A program made the translations under genes and the position numbers. The notes below the pieces were generated by a model. That model worked only from the letters and a program-made list of their open reading frames with translations. It was not told where the DNA came from and ran no database searches. DNA of 63,803 bases, filler included, from Octopus bimaculoides (Eukaryota), in NCBI RefSeq assembly GCF_001194135.2. It is 6 parts of 5 records of this genome, joined end to end, with 100 filler letters (N's around TTAATTAATTAA, not from the genome) between each part and the next. Parts side by side here need not be neighbours in the genome. Positions count along the whole stretch, not along the records: positions 18,912 to 40,577 come from NC_069001.1; 5 more parts are not named here. The stretch is one strand, 5' to 3'. Below are positions 18,912 through 40,577 of the stretch, piece after piece (within the stretch, counting starts at the first letter, position 1; each line of letters opens with the position of its first letter).

Positions 18912-21900
18912 ACGTACGAACTTACTTACGTACGCACGTTCTTTCCTTCCTTCGACCATTTGTTCATACGTACGATCGTTCGTTCGTTCGTACGTTCGTT
19001 AGTTTGTTCGTTCGTTCATACGTACGTACGTACATATGTACCTACTTACGTACGTTCGTTTGTTCGTTCGAACATACGTACGTTCAATTCTTTGTTCGTT
19101 CTTTCTTTTTTCGTACCTACGTACGTTCGTTCGTTTAATCGTTCGTTCTTTCGTTCGTACGTACGTTAGTCCGTTTCTTTGTTCGTTCGTTTGTTCGATC
19201 GTTCGTTCGTTCTTACATACGTACTTACGCACGTAAATCCGTACGTATGGACGTTCGTTCGTTGCCTCGTTCTTTCGTACGTACGTACTTTCGTTCATTA
19301 GGTCGTTAGTTTTTTCGTTCGTTCGTTCGTTTCATTCGTTCGTCCGTCCGTACGTTCGTTCGTTCTGACATACGTTCGTACGTACGTACGTTTCTTCGTT
19401 CGTTCGTTCGTTCGTTCATTCATATATATATACGTAGGNNNNNNNNNNNNNNNNNNNNNNNNNNNNNNNNNNNNNNNNNNNNNNNNNNNNNNNNNNNNNN
19501 NNNNNNNNNNNNNNNNNNNNNNNNNNNNNNNNNNNNNNNNNNNNNNNNNNNNNNNNNNNNNNNNNNNNNNNNNNNNNNNNNNNNNNNNNNNNNNNNNNNN
19601 NNNNNNNNNNNNNNNNNNNNNNNNNNNNNNNNNNNNNNNNNNNNNNNCTTACATACGTACTTACGGACGTAAATCCGTACGTACGGACGTTCGTTCGTTA
19701 GTTCTTTCGTACGTACGTACTTCGTTCATTAGGTCGTTCGTTTGTTCGTTCGTTCGTTTCAATCGTTCGTTCGTTTGTCCGTCCGTACGTTAGTTCGTTT
19801 TGACATACGTTCGTTCGTACGTACGTTTGTTCGTTCGTTCGTTCGTTCTTTCTTACGTACGTAAGTACGTACGTTCAATCGTTACTTCGTTCTTTCCTTC
19901 GTTCGTTCGATCGTTCGAACGTACGTACGTTCATTCAATCGTTCATTCAATCGTTCTTTCGTTCGTTTGTTCGTTCGTTCGTACGTACGAACTTACTTAC
20001 GTACGCATGTTCTTTCCGTCCGTTCGTTAGTTTGTTCGTTCGTTCATACGTACGTACGTACATATGTACCTACTTATGTACGTTCGTTTGTTCGTTCGAA
20101 CATACGTACGTTCAATTCTTTGTTCGTTCTTTCTTTTTTCGTACCTACGTACGTTCGTTCGTTCTTACATACGTACTTACGCACGTAAATCCGTACGAAT
20201 GGACGTTCGTTCGTTGCCTCGTTCTTTCGTACGTACGTTCGTTCGTTCGTCCGTCCGTTCGTTAGTTCGTTTTGACATACGTTCGTTCGTACGTACGTTT
20301 GTTCGTTCGTTCGTTCGTTCTTTCTTACGTACGTAAGTACGTACGTTCAATCGTTACTTCGTTCTTTCCTTCGTTCGTTCGATCGTTCGAACGTACGTAC
20401 GTTCATTCAATCGTACATACGTTCAATCGTTCTTTCGTTCGTTTGTTCGTTCGTTCCTTCATTTCGTTCGTTCATACGTACGGACGTACGTTAATTCTTT
20501 CGCACGTACGTACGTACCTTTGTTCGTTCGTTCGTACTTTAGTACGTCCGTACATTCTTTCGTTCAATCGTTCGTTCATTCCTTCGTACGTACGTTCATT
20601 CGTACGTTCGTTAGTTTGTTCGTTCGTTCGCTCGTTCGTTCGTACGTTCGTTCTTACGTACGTGCGTACGTTCGTTCATACATACGTACGTACATATGTA
20701 CCTACTTATGTACGTTCGCTTGTTCGTTCGTTCGTACATACGTACGTTCAATTCTTTTTTCGTACGTTCGTTCGTTTAATCGTTCGTACGTACCTTAGTC
20801 CGTTTTTTGTTCGTTCGTTTGTTCGATCGTTCGTTCGTTCTTACGTACGTAAATCCGTACGTACGGACGTTCGTTCGTTAGTTCTTTCGNNNNNNNNNNN
20901 NNNNNNNNNNNNNNNNNNNNNNNNNNNNNNNNNNNNNNNNNNNNNNNNNNNNNNNNNNNNNNNNNNNNNNNNNNNNNNNNNNNNNNNNNGTTCGTTTGTT
21001 CGTTCGTTCGTACATACGTACGTTCAATTCTTTGTTCGTACGTTCTTTTTTCGTACCTATGTACGTTCGTTCGTTCTTTCGTTCGTACGTACGTTCGTCC
21101 GTTTCTTTGTTCGTTCGTTTGTTCGATCGTTCGTTCGTTCTTACATACGTACTTACGCACGTAAATCCAAACGTACGGACGTTCGTTCGTTGCCTCGTTC
21201 TTTCGTACGTACGTACGTTCGTTCATTAGGTCGTTAGTTTTTTCATTCGTTCGTTTCATTCGTTCGTTCGTCCGTCCGTACGTTCGTTCGTTCTGACATA
21301 CGTTCGTACGTACGTACGTTTTTTCGTTCGTTCGTTCGTTCATTCATATATATGTACGTAGGAACATACGTACGTTCGTTCGTTCATAATTACGTTCCTT
21401 CTTTCGTTTATTCGTTCGGATTTACGAACTTACTTACGTACGCAGGTTCTTTCCTTCCTTCGACCATTTGTTCATACGTACGATCATTCGTTCGTACGTT
21501 CGTTAGTTTGTTCGTTCGTTCATACGTACGTACGTACATATTTACCTACTTATGTACGTTCGTTTGTTCGTTCGAACATACGTACGTTCAATTCTTTGTT
21601 CGTTCGTTCTTTTTTCGTACCTACGTACGTTCGTTCGTTTAATCGTTCGTACGTACGTTAGTCCGTTTCTTTGTTCGTTCGTTTGCTCGATCGTTCGTTC
21701 GTTCTTACATACGTACTTACGTACGTAAATCCGTACGAACGGACGTTCGTTCGTTAGTTCTTTCGTTCTTTCGTACGTACGTACTTCGTTCATTAGGTCG
21801 TTCGTTTCAATCGTTTGTTCGTTCGTCCGTCCGTACGTTAGTTCGTTTAGACATACGTTCGTTCGTACGTACGTTTGTTAGTTCGTTCGTTCGTTCGTTC

Positions 21901-24900
21901 ATTCATATATATGTACGCAGGAACATACGTACGTTCGTTCGTTAGTTCTTTCGTTCGTTCGTAATTACGTTCCTTCTTTCGTTTATTCGTTAGTACGTAC
22001 GAACTTACTTACATACGTACGTTCGTTCGTTTTTTCTTACGTACGTAAGTACGTACGTTCATTCGTTACTTCGTTCTTTCCTTCGTTCGTTCGAGCGTTC
22101 GAACGTACGTACGTTCATTCAATCGTACGTACGGACGCTCGTTTTTACGTTCATTCTTACGTACATACGTTCAATCGTTCTTTCGTTCGTTTGTTCGTTC
22201 GTTCCTTAATTTCCTTCGTTCATACGTACGGACGTACGTTTGTTCTTTCGCACGTACGTACGTATCTTTGTTCGTTCGTTCGTTCTTTCGTACGTCCGTA
22301 CATTCTTTCGTTCAATCGTTCGTTCATTCCTTCGTACGTACGTTCATTCGTACGTTCGTTAGTTTGTTCGTTCGTTCGCTCGTTCGTTCGTACGTTCGTT
22401 CGTACGTACGTGCGTACGTTCGTTAGTTTGTTCGTTCGTTCATACGTACGTACGTACATATGTACCTACTTATGTACGTTCGTTTGTTCGTTCGAACATA
22501 CCTACGTTCAATTCTTTGTTCGTTCGTTCTTTTTTCGTGCCTACGTACGTTCGTTCGTTTAATCGTTCGTTCTTTCGTTTGTGCGTACGTTAGTCCGTTT
22601 CTTTGTTCGTTCGTTTGTTCGATCGTTCGTTCGTTCTTACATACGTACTTACGCACGTAAATCCGTACGTACGGACGTTCGTTCGTTGCCTCGTTCTTTC
22701 GTACGTACGTACGTTCGTTCATTAGGTCGTTAGTTTTTTCGTTTGTTCGTTTCATTCGTTCGTCCGTCCGTACGTTCGTTCGTTCTGACATACGTTACTT
22801 CTTTCGTTTATTCGTTCTTTCCTTCGTTTGTTCGTTGGAACGTACGCTCGTTTTTACGTACATTCTTACGTATGTACGTACACACGTTCAATCGTTCTTT
22901 CGTTCCTTCGTTCCTTAATTTCGTTCGTTCATACATACGGACGTACGTTAGTTCTTTCGCACGTACGTACGTTCGTACATACGTAATTACGTTCGTTCGT
23001 TCTTACGTTCTTTCTTTCGTTCGATCGTTCCTTCATACTTACGTACGTACGTGCCTGCCTTCGTTCGTTCGTACTTACGTACGTACGTTCGTTCGTTCTT
23101 ACGTACGTAAGTCCGTACGTTCATTCGTTACTTCCTTCTTTCCTTCGTTTGTTCGTTCGATCGTTCGTACGTACGTATGTTCACTAAATCGTACGTACGT
23201 TCATTCAATCGTACGTACGTACGTTCGTTCGTACGTTCTTTCTTACGTGTGTACGTACATACGTTCAATCGTTCGTTTGTTCGTTCGTTCCTTAATTTCG
23301 TTCGTTCATACGTACGGACGTACGTTAGTTCTTTCGCACGTACGTACGTTCGTACATACGTAATTACGTTCGTTCGTTCTAACGTTCTTTCGTTTGATCG
23401 TTCGTACGTACGTATGTTCATTCAATCGTACGTACGTTCATTCTTACGTGTGTACGTACATACGTTCAATCGTTCGTTTGTTCATTCGTTCCTTCATTTC
23501 GTTCTTGCATACGTACGGACGTACGTTAGATCTTTCGTTCGTACGTACGTACGTTCATTCGCTCGTTCGATCGTTCCTACGTACGGATGTATGTACGTAC
23601 GTTCTTTCCTACGTACGTACGTTTGTTTGTTCATTCATTCCTTCGTTTGTTCATACATACGAACGTGCGTACCTTCTTTCGTTTGTTCGATCGTTGTCTC
23701 GTTCGTTCGTTCTTCCATTCTTTCTTTACTTCGTTCGTTCATTCGTTTGTTTGTTTCGTTCGTTCGTTCGTTCTTTCGTTCGTTCGTTTGTTTCGTTCTT
23801 CCGTACGTACGTACGATCATTCGTTCGTTCCTTCGCACGTACGTACGTACCTTTGTTCGTTCGTTCGTTCTTTCGTACGTACGTACGTTCGTTCATTCCT
23901 TCGTACGTACGTTCATTCGTACGTTCTTTCGTACGTTCGTTAGTTTGTTCGTTCGTTCGCTCGTTCGTTCGTACGTTCTTTCGTTCGTTCGTACGTACGT
24001 GCGTACGTTCGTTAGTTCGTTCGTTCATACGTACGTACGTACATATGTACCTACTTATGTACGTTCGTTTGTTCGTTCGTTCGTACATACGTACGTTCAA
24101 TTCTTTNNNNNNNNNNCTACTTATGTACGTTCGTTTGTTCGTTCGTTCGTACATACGTACGTTCAATTCTTTGTTCGTTCGTTCTTTTTTCGTACCTACG
24201 TACGTTCGTTCGTTCAATCGTTCGTTCTTACGTACGTTCGTCCGTTTCTTTGTTCGTTCGTTTGTTCGATCGTTCGTTCGTTCTTACATACGTAGTTACG
24301 TACGTAAATCCTTACGTACGGACGTTCGTTCGTTGCCTCGTTCTTTCGTACGTACGTACGTTCGTTCATTAGGTCGTTAGTTTTTTCGTTCGTTCGTTTC
24401 ATTCGTTCGTTCGTCCGTCCGTACGTTCGTTCGTTCTTTCGTTCGTTCGTAATTACGTTCCTTCTTTCGTTTATTCGTTCGTATGTACGAACTTACTTAC
24501 GTACGCACGTTCTTTCCTTCCTTCGACCATTTGTTCATACGTACGATCGTTCGATCGTACGTTCGTTAGTTTGTTCGTTCGTTCATACGTACGTACGTAC
24601 ATATGTACCTACTTATGTACGTTCGTTTGTTCGTTCATTCGTATATACGTACGTTCAATTCTTCGTTCGTTCGTTCTTTTTTCGTACCTACGTATGTTCG
24701 TTTGTTTAATCGTTCGTTTGTTCGATCGTTCGTTCGTTCTTACATACGTACTTACGTACGTAAATCCGTACGTGCGGACGTTCGTTCGTTAGAACGTACG
24801 AACTTACTTACGTACGTATGTTCGTTCGTTCTTTCTTACGTACGTAATTACGTACGTTCATTCGTTACTTCGTTCTTTCCTTCGTTCGTTCGTTGGAACG

Positions 24901-27900
24901 TACGTACGTTCATTCAATCTTACGTACGCTCGTTTTTACGTACATTCTTACGTATGTACGTACACACGTTCAATCGTTCTTTCGTTCGTTCGTTCCTTAA
25001 TTACGTTCGTTCATTACGTACGGACGTACGTTAGTTCTTTCGCACGTACGTACGTTCTTACATACGTAATTACGTTCTTTCTTTCGTTCGATAGTTCCTT
25101 CATACTTACGTACGTACGTACGTACCTACCTTCGTTCGTTCGTACTTACGTACATACGTTCGTTCGTTCTTACGTACGTAAGTACGTACGTTCATTCGTT
25201 ACTTCCTTCTTTCCTTCGTTTGTTCGTTCAATCGTTCGTACGTACGTTCGTCCGTTTCTTTGTTCGTTCGTTCGTTCTTACATACGTACTTACGCACGTA
25301 AATCCGTACGTACGGACGTTCGGTCGTTGCCTCGTTCTTTCGTACGTACGTACGTTCGTTCATCAGGTCGTTAATTTTTTCGTTCGTTCGTTTCATTCGT
25401 TCGTTCGTCCGTCCGTACGTTCGTTCGTTCTGACATACGTTCGTACGTACGTACGTTTTTTCGTTCGTTCGTTCGTTCATTCATATATATGTACGTTGGA
25501 ACATACGTACGTTCGTTCTTTCGTTGGTTCGTAATTACGTTCCTTCTTTCGTTTATTCGTTCNNNNNNNNNNNNNNNNNNNNNNNNNNNNNNNNNNNNNN
25601 NNNNNNNNNNNNNNNNNNNNNNNNNNNNNNNNNNNNNNNNNNNNNNNNNNNNNNNNNNNNNNNNNNNNNNNNNNNNNNNNNNNNNNNNNNNNNNNNNNNN
25701 NNNNNNNNNNNNNNNNNNNNNNNNNNNNNNNNNNNNNNNNNNNNNNNNNNNNNNNNNNNNNNNNNNNNNNNNNNNNNNNNNNNNNNNNNNNNNNNNNNNN
25801 NNNNNNNNNNNNNNNNNNNNNNNNNNNNNNNNNNNNNNNNNNNNNNNNNNNNNNNNNNNNNNNNNNNNNNNNNNNNNNNNNNNNNNNNNNNNNNNNNNNN
25901 NNNNNNNNNNNNNNNNNNNNNNNNNNNNNNNNNNNNNNNNNNNNNNNNNNNNNNNNNNNNNNNNNNNNNNNNNNNNNNNNNNNNNNNNNNNNNNNNNNNN
26001 NNNNNNNNNNNNNNNNNNNNNNNNNNNNNNNNNNNNNNNNNNNNNNNNNNNNNNNNNNNNNNNNNNNNNNNNNNNNNNNNNNNNNNNNNNNNNNNNNNNN
26101 NNNNNNNNNNNNNNNNNNNNNNNNNNNNNNNNNNNNNNNNNNNNNNNNNNNNNNNNNNNNNNNNNNNNNNNNNNNNNNNNNNNNNNNNNNNNNNNNNNNN
26201 NNNNNNNNNNNNNNNNNNNNNNNNNNNNNNNNNNNNNNNNNNNNNNNNNNNNNNNNNNNNNNNNNNNNNNNNNNNNNNNNNNNNNNNNNNNNNNNNNNNN
26301 NNNNNNNNNNNNNNNNNNNNNNNNNNNNNNNNNNNNNNNNNNNNNNNNNNNNNNNNNNNNNNNNNNNNNNNNNNNNNNNNNNNNNNNNNNNNNNNNNNNN
26401 NNNNNNNNNNNNNNNNNNNNNNNNNNNNNNNNNNNNNNNNNNNNNNNNNNNNNNNNNNNNNNNNNCATACGTACGGACGTACGTTAGTTCTTTCGCACGT
26501 ACGTACGTTCTTACATACGCAATTACGTTCTTTCTTTCGTTCGATAGTTCCTTCATACTTACGTACGTACGTACCTACCTTCGTTCGTTCGTACTTACGT
26601 ACGTAAGTACGTACGTTCATTCGTTACTTCCTTCTTTCCTTCGTTTGTTCGTTCGATCGTTCGTACGTACGTATGTTCATTCAATCGTACGTACGTTCAT
26701 TCAATCGTACGTACGTACGCTCGTTCGTACGTTCATTCTTACGTGTGTACGTACATACGTTCAATCGTTCGTTTGTTCCTTCATTTCGTTCGTTCATACG
26801 TACGTTCATTCAATCGTACGTACGTACGCTCGTTTTTACGTTCATTCTTACGTATGTACGTACATACGTTCAATCGTTCTTTCGTTCGTTTGTTCGTTCG
26901 TTCATACGTACGGACGTACGTTAGTTCTTTCGCACGTACGTACGTACCTTTTATCGTTCGTTCTTTCGTACGTCTGTACATTCTTTCGTTCAATCGTTCG
27001 TTCATTCCTTCGTACGTACGTTCATTCGTACGTTCGTTAGTTTGTTCGTTCGTTCGTTCGCTAGTTCGTTCGTACGTTTGTTAGTTTGTTCGTTCGTTCA
27101 TACGTACGTACGTACATATGTACCTACTTATGTACGTTCGTTTGTTCGTTCGTTCGTACATACGTACGTTCAATTCTTTGTTCGTCCGTTTGTTCGATCG
27201 TTCGTTCGTTCTTACATACGTACTTACGCACGTAAATCCGTAGGTACGGACGTTCGTTCGTTGCCTCGTTCTTTCGTACGTACGTACGTTCGTTCATTAG
27301 GTCGTTAGTTTTTTCGTTCGTTCGTTTCATTCGTTCTTTCGTCCGTCCGTACGTTCATTCGTTCTGACATACGTTCGTACGTACGTACGTTTTTTCGTTC
27401 GTTCGTTCGTTCATTCATATATATGTACGTTGGAACATACGTACGTTCGTTCTTTCGTTCGTTCGTAATTACGTTACTTCTTTCGTTTATTCGTTCGTAC
27501 GTACGAACTTACTTACGTACGCACGATCTTTCCTTCCTTCGACCATTTGTTCATACGTACGATCGTTCGTTAGTTTGTTTGTTCGTTCATACGTACGTAC
27601 GTACATATGTACCTACTTATGTACGTTCGTTTGTTCGTTCGAACATACGTACGTTCAATTCTTTGTTCGTTCGTTCTTTTTTCGTACCNNNNNNNNNNNN
27701 NNNNNNNNNNNNNNNNNNNNNNNNNNNNNNNNNNNNNNNNNNNNNNNNNNNNNNNNNNNNNNNNNNNNNNNNNNNNNNNNNNNNNNNNNNNNNNNNNNNN
27801 NNNNNNNNNNNNNNNNNNNNNNNNNNNNNNNNNNNNNNNNNNNNNNNNNNNNNNNNNNNNNNNNNNNNNNNNNNNNNNNNNNNNNNNNNNNNNNNNNNNN

Positions 27901-30900
27901 NNNNNNNNNNNNNNNNNNNNNNNNNNNNNNNNNNNNNNNNNNNNNNNNNNNNNNNNNNNNNNNNNNNNNNNNNNNNNNNNNNNNNNNNNNNNNNNNNNNN
28001 NNNNNNNNNNNNNNNNNNNNNNNNNNNNNNNNNNNNNNNNNNNNNNNNNNNNNNNNNNNNNNNNNNNNNNNNNNNNNNNNNNNNNNNNNNNNNNNNNNNN
28101 NNNNNNNNNNNNNNNNNNNNNNNNNNNNNNNNNNNNNNNNNNNNNNNNNNNNNNNNNNNNNNNNNNNNNNNNNNNNNNNNNNNNNNNNNNNNNNNNNNNN
28201 NNNNNNNNNNNNNNNNNNNNNNNNNNNNNNNNNNNNNNNNNNNNNNNNNNNNNNNNNNNNNNNNNNNNNNNNNNNNNNNNNNNNNNNNNNNNNNNNNNNN
28301 NNNNNNNNNNNNNNNNNNNNNNNNNNNNNNNNNNNNNNNNNNNNNNNNNNNNNNNNNNNNNNNNNNNNNNNNNNNNNNNNNNNNNNNNNNNNNNNNNNNN
28401 NNNNNNNNNNNNNNNNNNNNNNNNNNNNNNNNNNNNNNNNNNNNNNNNNNNNNNNNNNNNNNNNNNNNNNNNNNNNNNNNACTTCTTTCGTTTATTCGTT
28501 CGTACGTACGAACTTACTTACGTACGCACGATCTTTCCTTCCTTCGACCATTTGTTCATACGTACGATCGTTCGTTAGTTTGTTTGTTCGTTCATACGTA
28601 CGTACGTACATATGTACCTACTTATGTACGTTCGTTTGTTCGTTCGTTCGTACATACGTACGTTCAATTCTTTGTTCGTCCGTTCTTTTTTCGTACCTAC
28701 GTACGTTCGTTCGTTCTTACGTACGTAAGTACGTACGTTCATTCGTTACTTCCATCTTTCCTTAATTTCGTTCGTTCATACGTACGGACGTACGTTAGTT
28801 CTTTCGCACGTACGTACGTTCGTACATACGTAATTACGTTCGTTCGTTCTTACGTTCTTTCTTTCGTTCGATCGTTCCTTCATACTTACGTACGTACGTA
28901 CCTACCTTCGTTCGTTCGTACTTACGTACGAACGTTCGTTCGTTCTTACGTACGTTCATTCTTACGTACGTACGTACGTACATACGTTCAATGGTTCTTT
29001 CGTTCGTTTGTTCGTTCGTTCATACGTACGGACGTACGTTAGTTCTTTCGCACGTACGTACGTACCTTTGTTCGTTCGTTCGTACGTCCGTACATTCTTT
29101 CGTTCAATCGTTCGTTCATTCCTTCGTTCGTACGTTCGTTAGTTTGTTCGTTCGTTCGTTCGCTCGTTCGTTCGTACGTTCGTTCGTACGTACGTGCGTA
29201 CGTTCGTTCGTTTGTTTGTTCGTTCATTCATACGTACGTACGTACATATGTACCTACTTATGTACGTTCGTTTGTTCGTTCGTTCGTACATACGTACGTT
29301 CAATTCTTTGTTCGTCCGTTCTTTTTTCGTACCTACGTACGTTCGTTCGTTCTTACGTACGTAAGTACGTACGTTCATTCGTTACTTCCATCTTTCCTTA
29401 ATTTCGTTCGTTCATACGTACGGACGTACGTTAGTTCTTTCGCACGTACGTACGTTCGTACATACGTAATTACGTTCGTTCGTTCTTACGTTCTTTCTTT
29501 CGTTTGATCGTTCCTTCATTCTTACGTACGTACGTACCTGCCTTCGTTCGTTCGTACTTACGTACGTACGTTCGTTCGTTCTTACGTACGTAAGTACGTA
29601 CGTTCATTCGTTACATCCTTCTTTCCGTCGTTTGTTCGTTCGATCGTTCGTACGTACGTATGTTCATTCAATCGTACGTACATTCATTCTTACGTGTGTA
29701 CGTACATACGTTCAATCGTTCAATTGTTCGTTCGTTCCTTCATTTCGTTCTTTCATACGTACGGACGTACGTTAGTTCTTTCGTTTGTTCGATCGTTGTC
29801 TCGTTCGTTCCTTCGTCCATTCTTTCTTTACTTCGTTCGTTCATTCGTTTGTTTGTTTCGTTCGATCGTTCGTTCGCTCGTTCTTTCGTTCGTTCGTTTG
29901 TTTCGTTCGTTCGGACGTTCTTTCGTTCGTTCGTACGTACGTGCGTCCGTTCGTTAGTTTGTTCGTTCGTTCATACGTACGTACGTACATATGTACCTAC
30001 TTATGTACGTTCGTTTGTTCGTTCGTTCGTACATACGTACGTTCAATTCTTTGTTCGTCCGTTCTTTTTTCGTATCTACGTACGTTCGTTCATTCAATCG
30101 TTCGTACGTACGTTCGTCCGTTTCTTTGTTCGTTCGTTTGTTCGATCGTTCGTTCGTTCTTACATACGTACTTACGCACGTAAATCCGTAGATACGGACG
30201 TTCGTTCGTCGCCTCGTTCTTTCGTACGTACGTACGTTCGTCCGTCCGTACGTTCGTTCGTTCTAACATACGTACGTTTTTTCGTTCGTTCGTTCGTTCG
30301 TTCATTCATATATATGTACGTAGGAACATACGTACGTTCGTTCGTTCTTTCGTTCGTACGTACGAACTTACTTACGTACGCACTTTCTTTCCTTCCTTCG
30401 ACCATTTGTTCATACGTACGATCGTTCGTTCGTACGTTCGTTAGTTTGTTCGTTCGTTCATACGTACGTACGTACATATGTACCTACTTATGTACGTTCG
30501 TTTGTTCGTTCGAACATACGTACGTTCAATTCTTTGTTCGTTCGTNNNNNNNNNNCGTTTGTTCGTTCGAACATACGTACGTTCAATTCTTTGTTCGTTC
30601 GTTCTTTTTTCGTACCTACGTACGTTCGTTCGTTTAATCGTTCGTTCTTTCGTTCGTACGTACGTTAGTCCGTTTCTTTGTTCGTTCGTTTGTTCGATCG
30701 TTCGTTCGTTCTTACGTACGTCCTTACGTATGTAAATCCGAATGTACGGACGTTCGTTCGTTAGTTCTTTCGTTCTTTCGTACGTACGTTCGTTCATTAG
30801 GTCGTTCGTTTGTTCGTTCGTTGGTTTCATTCGTTCGTTCGTCCGTCCGTACGTTCGTTCGTTTTGACATACGTTCGTTCGTACGTACGTTCGTTCGTTC

Positions 30901-33900
30901 GTTCGTTCGTTCGTTCGTTCATTCATATATATGTACGCAGGAACATACGTACGTTCGTTCGTTCGTTCGTAATTACGTTCCTTCTTTCGTTTATTCGTTA
31001 GTACGTACGAACTTACTTACGTACGTTCGTTCGTTCTTTCTTACGTACGTTCATTCGTTACTTCGTTCTTTCCTTCGTTCGTTCGTTCGATCGTTCGAAC
31101 GTACGTACGTTCATTCAATCGTACGTACGTACACTCGTTTTTACGTACATTCTTACGTATGTACGAACATACGTTCAATCGTTCTTTCGTTCGTTTGTTC
31201 GTTCGTTCATACGTACGGACGTACGTTAGTTCTTTCGCACGTACGTACGTTCGTATATACGTAATTACGTTCGTTCGTTCTTACGTTCTTTCTTTCGTTC
31301 GATCGTTCCTTCATACTTACGTACGTACGTACCTACTTTCGTTCGTTCGTACTTACGTACGTACGTTCATTCGTTCTTACGTACGTAAGTACGTACGTTC
31401 ATTCGTTACTTCCTTCTTTCCTTCGTTTGTTCGTTCGATCGTTCGTACGTACGTATGTTCATTCAATCGTACGTACGTTCATTCAATCGTACGTACGTAC
31501 GCTCGTTCGTACGTTCATTCTTACGCGTGTACGTACATACGTTCAATAGTTCGTTTGTTCGTTCGTTCCTTCATTTCGTTCGTTCATACGTACGGACGTA
31601 CGTTAGTTCTTTCGTTCGTACGTACGTACGTTCATTCGCTCGTTCGATCGTTCCTACGTACGGATGTATGTACGTACGTTCGTTCGTACGTACGTTCGTT
31701 CGTACGTACGTTCGTTTGTTTTTTTCTATCTTTCTTTGGTTCGCATATGCGTTCTTTCCTACGTACGTACGTTTGTTTGTTCATTCGTTCCTTCGTTTGT
31801 TCTTACATACGAACGTGAGTACGTTCTTTCGTTTGTTCGATCGTTGTCTCGTTCGTTCCTTCGTCCATTCTTTCGTTACTTCGTTCGTTCATTCGTTTGT
31901 TTGTTTCGTTCGATCGTTCGTTCGCTCGTTCTTTCGTTCGTTCGTTTGTTTCGTTCGCTCGTTCGTTCGTACGTTCTTTCGTTCGTTCGTACGTACGTGC
32001 GTCCGTTCGTTAGTTTGTTCGTTCGTTCATACGTACGTACGGACGTATGTACCTACTTATGTACGTTCGTTTGTTCGTTCGTTCGTATATACGTACGTTC
32101 AATTCTTTGTTCGTTCGTTCGTACGTACGTTCGTCCGTTTCTTTGTTCGTTCGTTTGTTCGATCGTTCGTTCGTTCTTACATACGTACTTACGCACGTAA
32201 ATCCTTACGTACGGACTTCGTTCGTTGCCTCGTTCTTTCGTACGTACGTACGTTCGTTCATTCGGTCGTTAGTTTTTTCGTTCGTTCGTTTCATTCGTTC
32301 GTTCGTCCGTCCGTACGTTCGTTCGTTCTGACATACGTACGTTTTTTCGTTCGTTCGTTTGTTCGTTCGTTCATTCATATATATGTACGTAGGAACATAC
32401 GTACGTTCGTTCGTTCTTTCTTTCGTTCGTAATTACGTTCCTTCTTTCGTTTATTCGCTCGTACGTACGAACTTACTTACGTACGCACGTTCTTTCCTTC
32501 CTTCGACCATTTGTTCATACGTACGATCGTTCGTTCGTACGTTCGTTAGGTTGTTCGTTCGTTCATACGTACGTACGTACGTACATATGTACCTACTTAT
32601 GTACGTTCGTTTGTTCGTTCTAACATACGTACGTTCAATTCTTCGTTCGTTCGTTCATTTTTCGTACCTACGTACGTTCGTTCGTTCTTACATACGTACT
32701 TACGTACGTAAATCCGTACGTGCGGACGTTCGTTCGTTAGTTCTTTCGCTCTTTCGTACGTACGTACGTTCGTTCATTCATATAGATGTACGCAGGAACA
32801 TACGTACGTTCGTTCGTTCGTAATTACGTTCCTTCTTTCGTTTATTCGTTAGTACGTACGAACTTACTTACGTACGTTCGTTCGTTCTTTCTTACGTACG
32901 TAAGTACGTACGTTCATTCGTTACTTCGTTCTTTCCTTCGTTCGTTCGTTCGATCGTTCGAACGTACGTACGTACGCTCGTTCGTACGTTCATTCTTACG
33001 TGTGTACGTACATACGTTCAATCGTTCGTTTGTTCGTTCGTTCCTTCATTTCGTTCATTGAACGTATGTACGCACGAACGAAAGAACTAACGTACGTCCG
33101 TACGTTCAATCGCTCGTTCGATCGTTCCTACGTACGGATGTATGTACGTACGTTCGTTTGTTATTTTGTTCTATCTTTCTTTTATTCGCACATGCGTTCT
33201 TTCCTACGTACGTACGTTTGTTTGTTCATTCATTCGTTCGTTTGTTCTTACATACGAACGTGCGTACGTTCTTTCGTTTGTTCGATCGTTCGTTCGTCCA
33301 TTCTTTCGTTACTTCGTTCGTTCTTTCGCTCGTTCGTTCATTCGTATGTTCGTTTGTTTCGTTCGCTCGTTCGTTCGTACGTTCTTTCGTTTGTTCGTAC
33401 GTACGTACGTTCAATTCTTTGTTCGTTCGTTCGTACGTACGTTCGTCCGTTTCTTTGTTCGTTCGTTTGTTCGTTCGTTCTTACATACGTACTTACGCAC
33501 GTAAATCCTTACGTACGGACTTCGTTCGTTGCCTCGTTCTTTCGTACGTACGTACGTTCGTTCATTAGGTCGTTAGTTTTTTCGTTCGTTCGTTTCATTC
33601 GTTCGTTCGTTTCATTCGTTCGTTCGTCCGTCCGTACGTTCGTTCGTTCATTAGGTCGTTAGTTTTTTCGTTCGTTCATTCATATATATGTACGTAGGAA
33701 TATACGTACGTACGTTCGTTCTTTTGTTCGTTCGTAATTACGTTCCTTCTTTCGTTTATTCGTTCGTACGTACGAACTTACTTACGTACGCACGTTTTTT
33801 CCTTCCTTCGACCGTTTGTTCATACGTACGATCGTTCGTTCGTACGTTCGTTCATACGTACGTACGTATATATGTACCCACTTATGTATGTTCGTTTGTT

Positions 33901-36900
33901 CGTTCGAACATACGTACGTTCAATTCTTCGTTCGTTCGTTCGAACATACTTACGTTCAATTCTTTGTTCGTTCGTTCTTTTTTCGTACATACGTACGTTC
34001 GTTCGTACGTACGTTAGTCCGTTTCTTTGTTCGTTCGTTTGTTCGATAGTTCGTTCGTTCTTACATACGTACTTACGTAAATCCGTACGTACGGACGTTA
34101 GTTCTTTCGTACGTACGTACTTCGTTCATTAGGTCGTTCGTTTGTTCGTCCGTGCGTACGTTCGTTTTGACATACGTTCGTTCGTTCGTACGTACGTTTG
34201 TTCGTTCGTTCGTAATTACGTTCCTTCTTTCGTTTATTAGTTAGTACGTACGAACTTACTTACGTACGTACGTTCGTTCATTCTTTCTTACGTACGTAAG
34301 TACGTCCGTTCATTCGTTACTTCGTTCTTTCCTTCGTTCGTTCGTTCGGACGTTCATTCAATCGTACGTACGCTGGTTTTTACGTTCATTCTTACGTATG
34401 TACGTACATACGTTCAATCGTTCTTTCGTTCGTTCATTCATATATATGTACGTAGGAACATACGTACGTTCGTTCGTTCGTTCTTTCGTATATACGTTCC
34501 TTCTTTCGTTTATTCGTTCGTACGTACGAACTTACTTACGTACGCACGTTCTTTCCTTCCTTCGACCATTTGTTCATACGTACGATCGCTCGTTCGTACG
34601 TTCGTTAGTTTGTTCGTTCCGTCATACGTACGTCCGTACATATGTACCTACTTATGTACGTTCGTTTGTTCGTTCGAACATACGTACCTTCAATTCTTCG
34701 TTCGTTCGTTCTTTTTTCGTATCTACGTACGTTCGTTCGTTTAATCTTCGTTCTTTCGTTCGTACGTACGTTAGTCCGTTTCTTTGTTCGTTCGTTTGTT
34801 CGATCGTTCGTTCGTTCTAACATACGTACTTACGTACGTAAATCCGTACGTGCGGATGTTCGTTCGTTAGTTCTTTCGCTCTTTCGTACGTACGTACGTT
34901 CGTTCATTAGGTCGTTCGTTTGTTCGTTTCATTCGTTCGTTCGTTTCGTTCGTCCGTCCATACGTTCGTTCGTTTTGACATACGTTCGTTCGTACGTACG
35001 TTTGTTCGTTCGTTCGTTCATTCATATATATGTACGCAGGAACACACGTACGTTCGTAATTACGTTCCTTCTTTCGTTTATTCGTTAGTACATACGAACT
35101 TACTTACGTACGTTCGTTCGTTCTTTCTTACGTACGTTCATTCGTTACTTCGTTCTTTCCTTCGTTCGTTCGTTGGAACGTACGTACGTACGCTCGTTTT
35201 TACGTACATTCTTACGTATGTACGTACATACGTTCAATCGTTCTTTCGTTCGTTCCTTAATTTCGTTCGTTTATACGTACGGACGTACGTTAGTTCTTTC
35301 GCACGTACGTACGTTCGTACATACGTAATTACGTTCGTTCGTTCTTACGTTCTTTCTTTCGTTCGATCGTTCCTTCATACTTACGTACGTACGTACCTAC
35401 CTTCGTTCGTTCGTACTTACTTACGTACTTTCGTTCGTTCTTACGTACGTACGTTCATTCGTTACTTCCTTCATGCCTTCGTTTGTTCGTTCAATCGTTT
35501 GTACGTACGTATGTTCATTCAATCGTACGTACGTTCATTCAATCGTACGTACGTACGCTCGTTCGTACGTTCATTCTTACGTGTGTACGTACATACGTTC
35601 AATCGTTCGTTTGTTCTTTCGTTCATACGTACGGACGTACGTTAGTTCTTTCGTTCGTACGTACGTTCATTCGCTCGTTCGATCGTTCCTACGTACGTAT
35701 GTATGTACGTACGTTCTTTCCTATTTACGTACGTTTGTTTGTTCATTCGTTCCTTCGTTTGTTCTTTCGTACGTCCGTACATTCTTTCGTTCATTCCTTC
35801 GTACGTACGTTCGTTTGTTCGTTCATTCGCTCGTTCGTTCGTACGTTCTTTCGTTCGTTCGTACGTACGTGCGTACGTTCGTTCGTTCATACGTACGTAC
35901 GTACATATGTACCTACTTATGTACGTTCGTTTGTTCATTCGTTCGTACATACGTACGTTCAACTCTTTGTTCGTTCGTTCTTTTTTCGTACCTACGTACG
36001 TTCGTTCGTTCAATCGTTCGTTCTTTCGTTCGTCCGTTTCTTTGTTCGTTCGTTCGTTCGTTCTTACATACGTACTTACGCACGTAAATCCGTACATACG
36101 GACGTTCGTTCGTTGCCTCGTTCTTTCGTACGTTCGTTCATTAGGTCGTTAGTTTTTTCGTTCGTTCGTTTCATTCGTTCGTCCGTCCGTTCGTTCTGAC
36201 ATACGTTCGTACGTTTTTTCGTTCGTTCGTTCTTTCATTCATATATATGTACGTAGGAACATACGTACGTTCGTTTGTTCTTTCGTTCGTTCATAATTAC
36301 GTTCCTTCTTTCGTTTATTCGTTCGTACGTACGAACTTACTTACGTACGCACGTTCTTTCCTTCCTTCGACCATTTGTTCATACGCATGATCGTTCGTTC
36401 GTTCGTTCATACGTACGTACGTACATATTTACCTACTTATGTACGTTCGTTTGTTCGTTCGAACATGCGTACGTTCAATTCTTTGTTCGTTCGTTCTTTT
36501 TTCGTACCTACGTACGTTTAATCGTTCGTACGTACGTTAGTCCGTTTCTTTGTTCGATCGTTCGTTCGTTCTTACATACGTACGTACGGACGTTCGTTCG
36601 TTAGTTCTTTCGTTCGTACGTACGTTTGTTCGTTCGTTCGAACGTACGTACGTTCATTCAATCGTACGTACGTACGCTCGTTTTTACGTTCATTCTTACG
36701 TATGTACGTACATACGTTCAATCGTTCTTTCGTCCGTTCGTTCCTTAATTTCGTTCGTTCATACGTACGGACGTACGTTAGTTCTTTCGAAGGAAGGAAC
36801 GAAGAAACGAACGAACGTACGAATGGTCGTACGTACGTACGGAAGAACGAAATAAACGAACGAAACAAGCAAACGAACGAAGTAACGAAAGAATGGACGA

Positions 36901-38383
36901 ACGAACGAACGAGACAACGATCGAACGAAAGAACGTACGTACATACATCCGTACGTAGGAACGAGCGAACGAACGTACGTACAAACGAACGAAAAAACGA
37001 TTGAACGTATGTACGTACATACGTAAGAATGAACGTACGAACGATCGAACGAACGAAGGAAGGAATGAACGTACGTAAGAACGAACGAAGGTACGTACGT
37101 ACGTAAGTAGGTAGGAAAGATGGAACGTAAGAACGAACGAATGTAATTACGTATGTACGAACGAACGTACGTAGGTACGTATATAAGTACCTACGTACGA
37201 ATGAACGTAAATACGTCCGTAACAAGGAAGGAACGAACAAACAAATGAACGAACGAACGAGCGTGCGTATGTTCGAACGTACATATGTATGAATGAACGA
37301 ACGAACGAACAAAAGAATGTACGTACGTACGAACGAACGTACGTACGTATGACCGAACGTACGTACGTACGAACGAACGTAAATACGAACGAACGTAAGT
37401 ACGAATGATCGTACGTATGAACAAATGATCGAAGGAAGGAAAGAACGTGCGTACGTAAGTAAGTTCGTACGTACGAACGAATAAACGAAAGAAGGAACGT
37501 AATTACGAAAGAACGAGCGAACAGACGTACATACGTACGAACGAACGTATGTCAGAACGAACGAATGTACGGACGAACGAACGAACGAACGAAACGAACG
37601 AACGACCTAATGAACGAACGTACGTACGAAAGAACAAAAGAACTAACGAACGTCCGTACGTACGGATTTACGTACGTAAGTACGTATGTAAGAACGAACA
37701 AACGATCGAAAGAACGAACGAACGATCGAACGAAACAAACAAACGAATGAACGAACGAGCGAAAGACCGAACGAACGAACGATCGAACAAACGAAGGAAC
37801 GAATGAACAAACAAACGTACGTACGTAGGAAAGAACGCATGTGCGAACGAAAGAAAGATAGAACAAAAAAACAAACGAACGTACGTACGAACGAAAGAAC
37901 TAACGTACGTACGGTTGTACGAACGATCGTACGTATGAACAAATGATCGAAGGAAGAAAAGAACGTGCGTACGTAAGTAAGTTCGTACGTACGAACGAAT
38001 ATACGAAAGAAGGAGCGGAATTACGAACGAACGATCGAACAAACGAACGAACAAAGAAACGGACTAACGTACGTACGAACGAACGAACGATTGAACGAAC
38101 GAACGTACGTAGGTACGAAAAAAGAACGAACGAACAAAGAATTGAACGTACGTATGTACGAACGAACAAACGAACGTACATAAGTAGGTACATATGTACG
38201 TACGTATGAACGAACGAACAAACTAACGAACGAACAAACTAACGAACGTACGCACATACGTACGAATGAACGAACGTACGTACATACGAACGATTGAACG
38301 AAAGAATGTACGTACGTACGAAAGAACGAACGAACGAGCAAACATACTGCGAAGGAACGAACGAACAAACGAACGAATGATCG
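18912..38383. repeat. Large CpG-rich complex satellite built from TTCG/TACG tetramers with higher-order organisation; 36789-38383 inverted
   Basis: Continuous degenerate (TTCG)n/(TACG)n with recurrent landmarks (GACCATTTG, CATATGTACCTACTTATG, GTAAATCC, CATTAGGTCG, TGACATACG, GTAATTACG). Strand switches to (CGAA)n at ~36789. Several N gaps inside. Confidence 0.97.
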
Positions 38384-38688
38384 TTATTCATTATTCGTTT
38401 CATTTTGTTTGTTTCTCTCTTGAGTTATCTTCTCTCNNNNNNNNNNNNNNNNNNNNNNNNNNNNNNNNNNNNNNNNNNNNNNNNNNNNNNNNNNNNNNNN
38501 NNNNNNNNNNNNNNNNNNNNNNNNNNNNNNNNNNNNTAAATATATATATATATAAATAAATACAAATAAATATATATATATATATAAATAAATATAAATA
38601 AATATACATATATAAATAAATATATATATATATAAATAAATATATTGGAGAAAAAAAGATCATCATATTATATAACAGTTTACTCATA

Positions 38689-38853: not shown

Positions 38854-38928
38854 TCAGTGCCGTTGCAGGACGAATGCTGTACGACATAAGGGACAACTAG
38901 AGTTCTGACTTTCTGTAAACCATTTGTA
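38854..38928 (-). CDS. LTN1: LTN1 last coding exon (YKWFTESQNSSCPLCRTAFVLQRH-stop)
   Basis: Acceptor ttttctttctgatttgtatttcAG, phase 0, continuous with the previous exon. Supplies the final CxxC of the RING (YKWF...S.CPLCR motif). TGA at 38854-38856. Confidence 0.95.
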   Translation of the reverse strand, partial: YKWFTESQNSSCPLCRTAFVLQRH

Positions 38929-38987
38929 CTGAAATACAAATCAGAAAGAAAACATTTTCAACAGAGACTAGAATTACGAATGCAATA

Positions 38988-39102
38988 GGCACAGCAATGG
39001 CTGCGTAGTTGAGAAGCTTACTTCCCAACCACATGGTTTCAGGTTCCAGCCCAACCAAAGCCTTGTGGGTGGATTTGGTAGAAGGAAACTGAAAGAAGCC
39101 TG
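38988..39102 (+). mobile_element. SINE type 1 head inside the last LTN1 intron (antisense to the gene), internally deleted
   Basis: GGCTGCGTAGTTGAGAAGCTTACTTCCCAACCACATGGTTTCAGGTTC joined directly to CCAAAGCCTTGTGGGTGGATTTGGTAGAAGGAAACTGAAAG. Confidence 0.8.
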
Positions 39103-39136
39103 TTGTGTGTGTTTAGTAGATAAAAACAAAAAAGTT

Positions 39137-39170
<34 letters not shown>

Positions 39171-39371
39171 CATATATACATACAGTAAATATATATATAT
39201 AAATATATATGTATATACACACACACGATTGTGCATGCATGTGGTGTTTCTGCCCCCCTCCTCCTCCCAATGACATCCCCATATTTGGCAGTTATGGCCA
39301 CAGTCCAGTGATTGAAACAAAAGACACACAAAAGTGCTTAATTATAAAAAATATAATTGATCAATTCTCAC

Positions 39372-39539
39372 CAGACAAATGGAATGGAACTTCTTGTGGC
39401 AGGTCTTACATTGTTTCTGTGGCAGATGGTAGTCGGTGCCGTGGACGACACAGTAGCAGATGGTACATTCTTCAACACCTTCAAATTTCTTGTCAATATA
39501 CCGTTTCCATAGACACAGGCCATCCATGATATTGCCGTT
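39372..39539 (-). CDS. LTN1: Listerin E3 ubiquitin ligase (LTN1), penultimate coding exon, N-terminal part of the C4HC3 RING
   Basis: Minus strand: pyrimidine tract ctcatccttgctacttctataccctcacAG, then 168 nt (56 aa) NGNIMDGLCLWKRYIDKKFEGVEECTICYCVVHGTDYHLPQKQCKTCHKKFHSICL, then GTgag donor. Matches the characteristic listerin C-terminus ([46 protein letters not shown].CL) as recalled. Confidence 0.95.
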
Positions 39540-40252
39540 CTGTGAGGGTATAGAAGTAGCAAGGATGAGTTTGTGTAGATGTAGGTGGGTGGGGAAGGGG
39601 TCACGGCAGGCTGAAGCTAGTGATAGATTGGGATTAGGGAAGGGCCAGATTAAAACCCATAGAGGCCCTAAGCACTTAAAAGAAAAGAAAAATATAATAA
39701 ACCACAAAATAAATTTCTATTTTTCAAAATGAAACAAAACTAACAGCAAGATGGAAAATAATATTTTGAGATAATGAATATTTTGAAATTCTATTTCTGA
39801 CCAGATAAAAATCACTTTGAATATTATTTTAGCAAGTTTAAGGTAAGATGGAAAATGTTTTATTTTGATAGACTTCCACAATTTATATTTGAAAAGTTTC
39901 TTTTTCTTTAATTGTTAATTCTTGGATCAAATCCTCACTATGACACCGTGGACACTTCCAAATCATATTTCCAATCATATAAAAAGTTGATTGGAAATAA
40001 CAGAGTAATAGAAGTGGTGATAATAATGGCCGTAGTGGTTGCTTCGTAACCACATGGTCTTAGGTTCAGTCCCATTGCACGGCACCTTGGGCAAGTGTCT
40101 TCCTCCTGAGCGGATATGGCAAATGGAAACCGAGAGAAACCCATCGTGTGTGTGTGTGTGTGTGTGTTACTGTCTCCTTGCCTTGACTTCACTTCATGTT
40201 GTAGTTGTAAACAAGTGTCACTGTCATACAAGCAATGTCAGTCCTTTCCAAT

Positions 40253-40577
40253 CATCATCATCATCATCATCATCATTTAACGTCCGCTTTCCATGCTAGC
40301 ATGGGTTGGACGATTTGACTGAGGACTGGTGAAACCGGATGGCAACTCCAGGCTCCAATCTAAATTTGACAGAGTTTCTACAGCTGGATGCCCTTCCTAA
40401 CGCCAACCACTCAGAGAGTGTAGTGGGTGCTTTTACGTGTCACCCGCACGAAAACGGCCACGCTCGAAATGGTGTCTTTTATGTGCCACCCGCACAAGAG
40501 CCAGTCCAGGGGCACTGGCAACGATCTCGCTCGAAAACCCTACAAGGCCAGTCAGGCGGTACTGGCAACGGTCACGC
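40253..40577 (-). mobile_element. SINE or LINE end with an RTE-type 3' tail
   Basis: Minus strand ends CCAACCCATGCTAGCATGGAAAGCGGACGTTAAA(TGA)n and contains GGTTGGCGTTAGGAAGGGCATCCAGCTGTAGAAAC. An older relative lies near 61630-61700 (plus). Confidence 0.7.

What the first reader, a model, noticed from the sequence alone, without database searches (positions are those of the whole stretch)
18912..38383. ~19.5 kb CpG mega-satellite written in a two-word TTCG/TACG alphabet, abutting the LTN1 3' end
Seen: the array keeps a 4-nt phase with CpG at positions 3-4 almost throughout, in otherwise AT-rich, CpG-poor sequence. It is neither a simple microsatellite nor a classical satellite with a unique monomer: long units are spelled by the order of TTCG versus TACG words plus point variants. 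It ends ~470 nt (including a 100-N gap) from the LTN1 stop codon. Inference: this may be a microsatellite-derived complex satellite acting as a methylation sink, heterochromatin or boundary block, or a centromere-associated repeat. I do not recognise it as a named family.
Basis: partly seen in the sequence, partly recalled or inferred. Interest (0 to 1): 0.75.

Follow-up and report, generated by a model that had tools for sequence, protein, structure and literature searches.

The report
Decayed TTCG/TACG microsatellite-derived satellite block
This is a real, non-coding block of at least 17 kb, built from decayed TTCG and TACG four-letter repeats that were re-duplicated in long patches beside the LTN1 gene; it is an ordinary kind of repeat with no sign of a special function.

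Summary
From 18912 to 38383, 97% of CpG-to-CpG spacings are multiples of 4. CpG observed/expected is 3.4, against 0.55 in the flank. TTCG and TACG make up 53% of in-phase tetramers, and 91% lie within one substitution of either word.

There is no fixed long monomer. Modules of 100-650 bp recur about 8 times at about 92% identity, in shuffled order.

- The last 1.6 kb (36789-38383) is inverted.
- Both 10-N gaps are scaffolding overlaps (56 and 47 identical bases), and the 792-N gap dovetails at 97%.
- The array is cut off by the piece's left edge.

It is not coding (all three + frames are equally open, no Pfam match) and matches no Rfam family.

Copy-private substitutions show no excess of CpG transitions (1.3-1.5% against 1.2-1.4% for non-CpG C>T). 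This argues against the "methylation sink" reading.

My best reading is a cryptically simple, microsatellite-derived complex satellite that grew by slippage, point decay and unequal exchange. It is probably neutral.

Other TTCG-based arrays exist in unrelated metagenome contigs, one of them 4.6 kb long.

Heterochromatin, boundary or centromere roles could not be tested here. Adjacency to LTN1 rests on a 100-N scaffold gap. Interest is low to moderate.

The parts
18912..36788 (+). Main array, T-rich strand up. It consists of in-phase TTCG/TACG words and their one-base derivatives, arranged as a patchwork of 100-650 bp modules. It is cut off on the left by the piece's edge.
   Evidence: AT skew is about -0.5 throughout.
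36789..38383 (-). Inverted block of the same satellite, reading CGAA/CGTA on the + strand. The junction lies at TTCG|AA.
   Evidence: AT and GC skew flip here. TRF consensus is CGAA. All 101 HSPs to the main array are on the minus strand, at 92.3% identity with 87% coverage and depth 4, against 6-10 for control blocks. The arms around the junction are only 70-78% complementary, so this is not a fold-back artefact.
38384..38436 (.). T-rich tail with one CpG (TTATTCATTATTCGTTTCATTTTGTTTG...). It may be a decayed forward-type remnant and ends at the 100-N gap.
   Evidence: Read directly. It gives only 11-12 bp matches to the array, so this reading is tentative.
24107..24116 (.). 10-N gap that is a contig-overlap join. 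The 56 bases on either side are identical.
   Evidence: 24051-24106 equals 24117-24172 at 100%. Three ungapped paralogs imply a distance of -56.
30546..30555 (.). 10-N gap that is a contig-overlap join. The 47 bases on either side are identical.
   Evidence: 30499-30545 equals 30556-30602 at 100%. Five ungapped paralogs imply -47.
27689..28480 (.). 792-N gap whose flanks dovetail. It is either an overlap of two contigs or a real tandem copy 1005 bp apart.
   Evidence: 27476-27688 against 28481-28697 gives 211/217, with both alignments ending exactly at the gap.
19439..19647 (.). 209-N gap inside the array. Its true size cannot be determined. The same applies to the gaps at 20890-20989 and 25563-26465.
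   Evidence: The same repeat on the same strand lies on both sides, but paralog spans give inconsistent distances.
38437..38536 (.). 100-N scaffold gap between the array and the LTN1 side. Linkage of the two rests on scaffolding only.
38537..38645 (.). AT-only microsatellite (TAAA/TATA, period 4-32) between the gap and the LTN1 3' UTR.
   Evidence: TRF rows for 38537-38645.
38854..38928 (-). Last coding exon of an LTN1 (listerin) homologue, YKWFTESQNSSCPLCRTAFVLQRH*, with the stop codon at 38854-38856. AATAAA-type signals lie about 140-165 nt downstream on the minus strand.
   Evidence: The homologues found carry Pfam zf-RING_2 and LTN1-type domains.
39372..39539 (-). Penultimate LTN1 exon, the first part of the RING ([56 protein letters not shown]). 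It has an AG acceptor and a GT donor.

Best explanation
This is a non-coding, cryptically simple satellite that arose from a compound tetranucleotide microsatellite, (TTCG)n with a one-base variant word TACG.

What the sequence shows:
- The two words cluster in short runs.
- Most other words are single substitutions of them.
- One-base indels shift the phase about every 200 bp.
- Stretches of 100-650 bp recur about 8 times at about 92% identity, in shuffled order.
- The terminal 1.6 kb is inverted.

What I infer:
- The tract first grew by replication slippage and then decayed by point mutation.
- Long pieces of the decayed tract were re-amplified by unequal crossing-over or segmental duplication. 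Breakpoints fell in the low-complexity TTCG runs, giving a patchwork rather than a fixed monomer.
- CpG stays dense because the array is not, or only weakly, methylated in the germline, so CpGs mutate no faster than other cytosines.
- It most probably has no sequence-specific function. Its likely effects are side-effects: a hairpin-prone, recombination-prone, hard-to-assemble block just beyond the 3' end of LTN1.
For: - Four-base phase and word composition.
- Same-word neighbours are enriched over shuffles: TTCG-TTCG 441 against 324 +/- 13.5, and TACG-TACG 383 against 235 +/- 12. No shuffle out of 500 reached the observed value. This is the footprint of slippage.
- The longest pure runs are only 7 TTCG and 4 TACG units, so the tract is old and decayed.
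- The module map against 21449-24106 shows shuffled, colinear patches. Neighbouring patches overlap by 1-24 bases at most junctions, which is microhomology.
- 97% of the array has internal paralogs, with median depth 8. Identity is about 92% whatever the distance between copies.
- No long period.
- No foreign insert.
- Not coding: stop frequency is 1.1-1.3 per 100 codons in all three + frames alike, the period of 4 is not a multiple of 3, and there is no Pfam hit.
- No Rfam family and no tRNA.
- CpG transitions are not elevated among copy-private changes.
- In Octopus bimaculoides fewer than 10% of CpGs are methylated, and repeats are largely unmethylated (PMC9476566). This applies only if the organism is an octopus.
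- Similar TTCG-based tracts exist elsewhere. L005 is a 4.6 kb array of period 12/16. L004 and L006 are 300-400 bp TTCG/TACG compound microsatellites.
- Single-strand folding gives z = -5.3, from self-pairing TACG runs.
Against: - The order and number of modules come from a gapped short-read-style scaffold. At least two joins are artefacts, so part of the patchwork could be an assembly product.
- The private-substitution counts are small (20-23 per class) and could include sequencing errors. Biased gene conversion could mask CpG decay.
- PMC9476566 reports that satellites, as a class, are somewhat more methylated than other octopus repeats.
- Absence of function cannot be shown from sequence.
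- The organism was not identified with the tools.
Confidence: 0.75

Rival explanations
1. It is largely an assembly construct. The repeat family is real, but the 19.5 kb length, the module order, the inversion and the adjacency to LTN1 come from mis-joined or collapsed contigs of a dispersed or much larger repeat.
For: - There are six internal gaps plus one gap before LTN1.
- Both 10-N gaps are overlap joins that leave duplicated sequence.
- The 792-N gap dovetails at 97%.
- Linkage to LTN1 crosses a 100-N gap.
- The TACG runs are hairpin-prone, which is typical of regions that sequence badly.
Against: - The longest N-free contig (30556-38436, 7.9 kb) already shows the patchwork, the inversion junction and the array's right edge.
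- Paralogs differ by about 8%, enough for unique assembly paths.
- The inversion arms are only 70-78% complementary, unlike chimeric fold-backs.
Confidence: 0.3
2. It is a functional chromatin element: a methylation sink, a heterochromatin block, or an insulator or boundary beside LTN1. It would work through its dense CpGs, for example by binding methyl-CpG or CXXC proteins.
For: - CpG density is extreme (observed/expected 3.4, one CpG per 6.6 bases).
- Satellites are the one repeat class with somewhat raised methylation in O. bimaculoides (PMC9476566).
Against: - There is no CpG hypermutability, so heavy germline methylation is unlikely.
- There is no conserved motif beyond the repeat words themselves.
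- TTCG-based arrays occur in unrelated contigs in other contexts, including an intron.
- No chromatin data are available.
Confidence: 0.08
3. It is a centromere-associated or pericentromeric satellite.
For: It is a tandem, strand-asymmetric repeat with a strand switch, features also seen in some centromeric satellites. I found no description of cephalopod centromere sequences in the literature searches.
Against: - There is no regular monomer or higher-order period.
- Only about 17 kb is seen.
- It lies nominally about 0.5 kb from the stop codon of a housekeeping gene.
- The marker 21-mer was not found in any metagenome contig, so there is no sign of high abundance. That collection is a poor test, though.
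Confidence: 0.04
4. It encodes a low-complexity (FVRS/YVRT) protein.
For: ORFs of 150-370 aa are present on the + strand.
Against: - All three + frames are equally stop-poor, because the two words contain no stop triplet.
- The period of 4 breaks any codon register.
- No Pfam family matches.
- Database hits are only unrelated low-complexity FIHS/FVRS translations at 57% identity or less.
Confidence: 0.01

Closest known systems
Bkm (banded krait minor) satellite of snakes, made of (GATA)n and (GACA)n
   Same: A satellite written with two tetranucleotide words that differ at one base, interspersed in one larger repeat (PMC5793158).
   Different: - The words are different (GATA/GACA, no CpG).
- Bkm accumulates on heterochromatic W or Y chromosomes. 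The chromosomal position here is unknown, and this array sits beside a housekeeping gene.
- No sequence relationship.
Human satellites 2 and 3 (HSat2/HSat3), derived from the pentamer (CATTC)n (from my own knowledge, not tested here)
   Same: A short simple motif that has diverged by point changes and been re-amplified in long, irregular higher-order blocks, with strand switches within arrays. They are detectable only as an imperfect short-period repeat.
   Different: HSat2/3 are Mb-scale, pericentromeric and pentameric. This array is at least 17 kb as seen, tetrameric and CpG-saturated, and its location is unknown.
Cryptic simplicity, or compound and imperfect microsatellites (concept of Tautz, Trick and Dover 1986; from my own knowledge)
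   Same: Scrambled arrangements of a few short motifs generated by slippage plus mutation. Same-word clustering exceeds chance.
   Different: Such regions are usually tens to hundreds of bases long. Here there is a second layer, re-duplication of modules of 100-650 bp, that extends it to tens of kb.
TTCG-based arrays in unrelated metagenome contigs: L005 (Ga0058701_10028794), L004 and L006 (OFEP01044645.1, OFHQ01036762.1)
   Same: They use the same base word. L004 and L006 mix TTCG and TACG in phase over 300-400 bp. L005 is a 4.6 kb decayed TTCG array.
   Different: - L005 uses TTCA/TTCC as second words, has a clear 12/16-base period and almost no TACG.
- None shares the long modules. The marker 21-mer has 0 hits.
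- Their organisms are unknown.
CpG islands
   Same: Very high CpG observed/expected (3.4) over a long stretch, apparently escaping CpG decay.
   Different: GC is only 42-43%, below the usual 50% criterion. It is a tandem repeat, not a promoter, and sits at a gene's 3' side.

Membership tests
Microsatellite (simple sequence repeat) | Head-to-tail copies of a 1-6 base unit | tested here: met
   Period 4 throughout. 97% of CpG spacings are multiples of 4.
Microsatellite (simple sequence repeat) | High purity of one unit, with tracts usually under 1 kb | tested here: not met
   Only 70% matches to CGTT. The longest pure runs are 7 x TTCG and 4 x TACG. 17.3 kb is sequenced.
Classical satellite with a defined monomer or higher-order repeat | A monomer of fixed length repeated at a constant period | tested here: not met
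   No offset above the smooth decay of the 4-base signal up to 3.2 kb. Marker spacings range from 487 to 2515 bp. The module order is shuffled.
Microsatellite-derived complex satellite (HSat2/3-like or Bkm-like) | Diverged copies of a short motif as the ground pattern | tested here: met
   91% of in-phase words lie within one substitution of TTCG or TACG.
Microsatellite-derived complex satellite (HSat2/3-like or Bkm-like) | Longer segments of the decayed tract re-amplified within the array | tested here: met
   Median of 8 paralogs per position, 87-98% identity, HSPs up to 684 bp.
Microsatellite-derived complex satellite (HSat2/3-like or Bkm-like) | Heterochromatic location and high genomic copy number | not testable with these tools
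   No reads, no genome of the organism and no chromatin data. The marker is absent from metagenome contigs.
Centromeric satellite | Binding of centromeric histone (CENP-A), in Mb-scale arrays at the primary constriction | not testable with these tools
   Only a 21.7 kb piece is available.
CpG island (Gardiner-Garden and Frommer criteria) | GC at least 50% and CpG observed/expected at least 0.6 over at least 200 bp | tested here: not met
   Observed/expected is 3.4, which meets the criterion, but GC is 41-44%, which does not.
Protein-coding gene | One reading frame kept open against the others, with homologues or domains | tested here: not met
Structured RNA family (Rfam) or tRNA-derived element | Match to a covariance model at gathering score | tested here: not met
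   0 matches over 18912-40577. 0 tRNAs.

The most novel reading that the evidence does not exclude
The array could be a germline-unmethylated, CpG-saturated platform with a chromatin role of its own. One possibility is a landing pad for CXXC or Polycomb-type proteins that insulates the 3' end of LTN1. Another is one copy of an abundant, strand-switching satellite that marks cephalopod (peri)centromeres. I found no sequence-level description of cephalopod centromeres in the literature searches.
Probability: 0.05. Interest if true: 0.6.

Novelty: new member of a known kind. Interest (0 to 1): 0.25.

Why it matters
If my reading is right, it matters little for biology. It is one more example of how a compound microsatellite can decay and then be re-amplified into a patchwork satellite.

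It has some practical uses:
- It marks a scaffold region whose gaps, duplicated overlaps and inversion should not be trusted.
- Gene callers can be fooled by its long ORFs.
- It offers a clean natural test of whether CpG-dense repeats in this invertebrate genome escape methylation. The substitution spectrum here says they do.

Tried and rejected
1. Species identification through the LTN1 C-terminus. The best database hit is only 65% identical. Its Logan contig looks like an LTN1 transcript, with only 229 bases after the gene and no array. The organism stays unidentified. The flanking SINE-like elements remind me of octopus repeats, but that is memory, not a test.
2. Search for orthologous or paralogous arrays through an array ORF. 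Only unrelated FIHS/FVRS low-complexity translations came back, at 57% identity or less. The exact-ORF look-up found nothing.
4. Rfam, tRNA and Pfam gave nothing.
5. Literature searches for an octopus or cephalopod satellite, for TTCG/TACG satellites and for AACG/ACGT microsatellites found no description of this repeat.
6. A fixed higher-order period is rejected.
7. A fold-back artefact at the inversion is rejected, because the arms are only 70-78% complementary.
8. Word swapping (TTCG<->TACG) as a favoured mutation is rejected. T>A and A>T at word position 2 are the rarest private changes, at 0.15-0.26%.
9. Local homogenisation is at most weak. Identity is about 92% in all distance bins, with only slightly more copies at >=96% identity within 2 kb.
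10. Dfam and Repbase are not available here, so "no named family" remains unchecked.
Full report
**What is there**

The piece runs from 18912 to 40577. Positions 18912 to 38383 form one uninterrupted repeat block.

- Every N-free stretch of it has 42-43% GC and a CpG observed/expected ratio of 3.39-3.49. The 2 kb flank has 38% GC and a ratio of 0.55.
- Of 2625 CpG-to-next-CpG distances, 1586 are 4, 541 are 8 and 292 are 12. In all, 97.0% are multiples of four.
- Phase slips of one base occur every 160-300 bp. The median in-phase chain is 46 words.
- Read in phase, TTCG is 28.5% and TACG 24.1% of words, and 61.7% of words end in CG.
- 52.6% of words are exactly one of the two, 38.5% are one substitution away and 8.9% are further.
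- No 60-base window has three or fewer CpGs, so nothing foreign is inserted in the sequenced parts.

**Long-range structure**

- TRF reports only period 4 (CGTT) at 70% matches, plus a few local 13-109 bp periods.
- Base identity at offset d falls smoothly from 0.70 at d = 4 to 0.50 at d = 100. No offset up to 3.2 kb stands out.
- A strict self-comparison nevertheless gives 577 HSPs, the longest 684 bp. Median identity is 92% (5th-95th percentile 87-97%).
- 97% of the forward array has at least one paralog of 100 bp or more, at median depth 8. Identity is about 92% whatever the distance between copies.
- Mapping the whole array on the longest clean stretch (21449-24106) gives short colinear patches in shuffled order. 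Neighbouring patches overlap by 1-24 bases at most junctions.

So there is no monomer. There is a library of modules of 100-650 bp, re-used in variable order.

- AT skew, GC skew and the TRF consensus flip at 36788/36789. Positions 36789-38383 are the reverse complement of the same satellite.
- All 101 HSPs from that block to the main array are on the minus strand. Identity is 92.3%, coverage 87% and depth 4, against 6-10 for forward control blocks.
- The junction reads TTCG|AA. The arms around it are only 70-78% complementary, which is the background level for this repeat. It is therefore not the near-perfect palindrome a chimeric fold-back would leave.
- After 38383 come 53 T-rich bases that may be a decayed forward-type remnant. 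The support is only 11-12 bp matches.
- The left end of the array is the edge of the piece.

**Gaps**

- Both 10-N gaps are overlap joins. 24051-24106 equals 24117-24172 (56/56) and 30499-30545 equals 30556-30602 (47/47). Three and five ungapped paralogs imply distances of -56 and -47. The sequence there is continuous, and the N plus one duplicate are artefacts.
- The 792-N gap has a perfect dovetail: 27476-27688 against 28481-28697, 211/217. It is either an overlap of two contigs or a real tandem copy 1005 bp away.
- For the 209-, 100- and 903-N gaps, the same repeat on the same strand lies on both sides. Paralogs give discordant distances, so the gap sizes are unknown.
- 17,345 bases are sequence-supported.
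- The array and the LTN1 side are joined only across a 100-N gap.

**Flank**

On the minus strand lie the last two coding exons of an LTN1 (listerin) homologue.

- 39372-39539 encodes NGNIMDGL...KKFHSICL.
- 38854-38928 encodes YKWFTESQNSSCPLCRTAFVLQRH*, with the stop codon at 38854-38856.
- Database relatives carry RING and LTN1 domains.
- Poly(A)-type signals lie about 140-165 nt after the stop. An AT-only microsatellite follows at 38537-38645.

**Not a gene, not a known RNA**

- The + strand carries ORFs of 150-370 aa.
- All three + frames are equally poor in stops (1.07, 1.21 and 1.31 per 100 codons, against 3.7-4.9 on the other strand). The two words simply contain no stop triplet, and a period of 4 cannot keep a codon register.
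- Three ORFs have no Pfam match.
- A database search returned only unrelated low-complexity FIHS/FVRS translations.
- Rfam and ARAGORN found nothing.

**How it arose (inference)**

- Same-word neighbours are enriched: TTCG-TTCG 441 against 324 +/- 13.5 and TACG-TACG 383 against 235 +/- 12. None of 500 shuffles reached the observed values. This is the footprint of slippage.
- Pure runs are now short, at most 7 and 4 units, so the primary tract is old and decayed.
- The second layer, modules at about 92% identity in shuffled order with microhomology at junctions, fits unequal exchange or segmental duplication inside a tract where misalignment is easy.
- Single-stranded DNA from the array folds much better than shuffles (-55.2 against -37.2 +/- 3.4 kcal/mol, z = -5.3). 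TACG runs are self-complementary. That would favour slippage and fork stalling, and may explain the assembly gaps.

**Methylation**

I inferred the ancestral base at each position from four or more paralogs with at least 80% agreement, and counted changes private to one copy.

| Class | Count | Rate |
|---|---|---|
| CpG C>T | 22/1730 | 1.27% |
| CpG G>A | 23/1734 | 1.33% |
| Non-CpG C>T | 12/877 | 1.37% |

- With phase assignment the figures are 1.37% and 1.48% against 1.16%.
- The ratio is about 1.2. By my own rough estimate from these counts it is unlikely to exceed about 2, far below the roughly tenfold excess expected of germline-methylated CpGs (established knowledge).
- Among fixed word variants, transitions (NNCA + NNTG, 17.2%) barely exceed transversions (NNCT + NNCC + NNAG + NNGG, 15.8%).
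- The array therefore does not behave as a methylation sink in the germline.
- If the organism is an octopus, this agrees with the finding that fewer than 10% of CpGs are methylated and repeats are largely unmethylated. Satellites as a class were somewhat higher, however (PMC9476566).
- Caveats: the counts are small, errors are possible and gene conversion could interfere.

**Comparison with known things**

- Functionally and structurally, the closest models are microsatellite-derived complex satellites. These include the snake Bkm repeat, built of GATA and GACA words (PMC5793158), and human HSat2/3, built from decayed CATTC (my own knowledge).
- TTCG-based tracts are not unique to this genome. 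A 24-mer of pure words hit five metagenome contigs.
- L004 and L006 carry 300-400 bp in-phase TTCG/TACG tracts. The one in L004 looks intronic.
- L005 is a 4.6 kb decayed TTCG/TTCA/TTCC array with a 12/16-base period.
- None of them shares the long modules, and the marker 21-mer has no hit.
- I found no published description. Dfam and Repbase could not be searched.
- If the organism is an octopus, it would be the genome reported to hold the most SSRs among 719 eukaryotes (PMC6387519).

**Verdict**

The structural interpretation is supported. The functional suggestions are unsupported, and for methylation the evidence runs against them.

It is a new member of a known kind of repeat. It is of low to moderate interest, mainly as an assembly caveat and as a small natural experiment on CpG stability.

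Noticed in passing
window 38975-39150 and 40015-40175: Two partial copies of one SINE-like element in the LTN1 introns. They share motifs such as AACCACATGGT..AGGTTC and GGAAAC.GA.AGAA.CC, and each ends in a (TG)n/(TA)n tail. No tRNA was detected by ARAGORN. From memory they resemble the abundant octopus SINE, but this was not tested.
   Followed up: partly
window 40251-40577: An (ATC)9 run is followed by GC-richer, TE-like sequence with internal near-repeats (GCCAC.CGCAC.A...GCCAGTC.AGG..CACTGGCAAC). It runs into the piece's edge.
   Followed up: no
window 39139-39230: A compound (TG)n(TA)n(CA)n microsatellite inside the LTN1 intron (TRF row 39155-39217).
   Followed up: no
L005 423-4993 (Ga0058701_10028794): An unrelated JGI metagenome contig is almost entirely a decayed TTCG/TTCA/TTCC array with period 12/16 at 75% matches, running off the contig end. 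Multi-kb TTCG-derived satellites therefore exist in at least one other, unknown eukaryote.
   Followed up: partly
L004 630-1000 and L006 285-714 (OFEP01044645.1, OFHQ01036762.1): In-phase TTCG/TACG compound microsatellites of 300-400 bp. In L004 the tract sits between two exon-like stretches with splice-site-like borders, so it appears to be intronic.
   Followed up: partly
L001 (Logan SRR21705869_350527): The closest LTN1 relative found (65% identity over the RING) lies on a 5.8 kb intron-less contig that carries LTN1 in several broken ORFs. It looks like a transcript assembly of another animal.
   Followed up: no
window 31455-31754: Single-stranded DNA of the array folds at -55.2 kcal/mol, against -37.2 +/- 3.4 for shuffles (z = -5.3). 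The cause is self-complementary TACG runs, which give hairpin or cruciform potential.
   Followed up: partly
window 28561-28955 and 29197-29591: The youngest duplication seen: 395 bp at 98.0% identity, 636 bp apart. This points to recent local tandem duplication inside the array.
   Followed up: no
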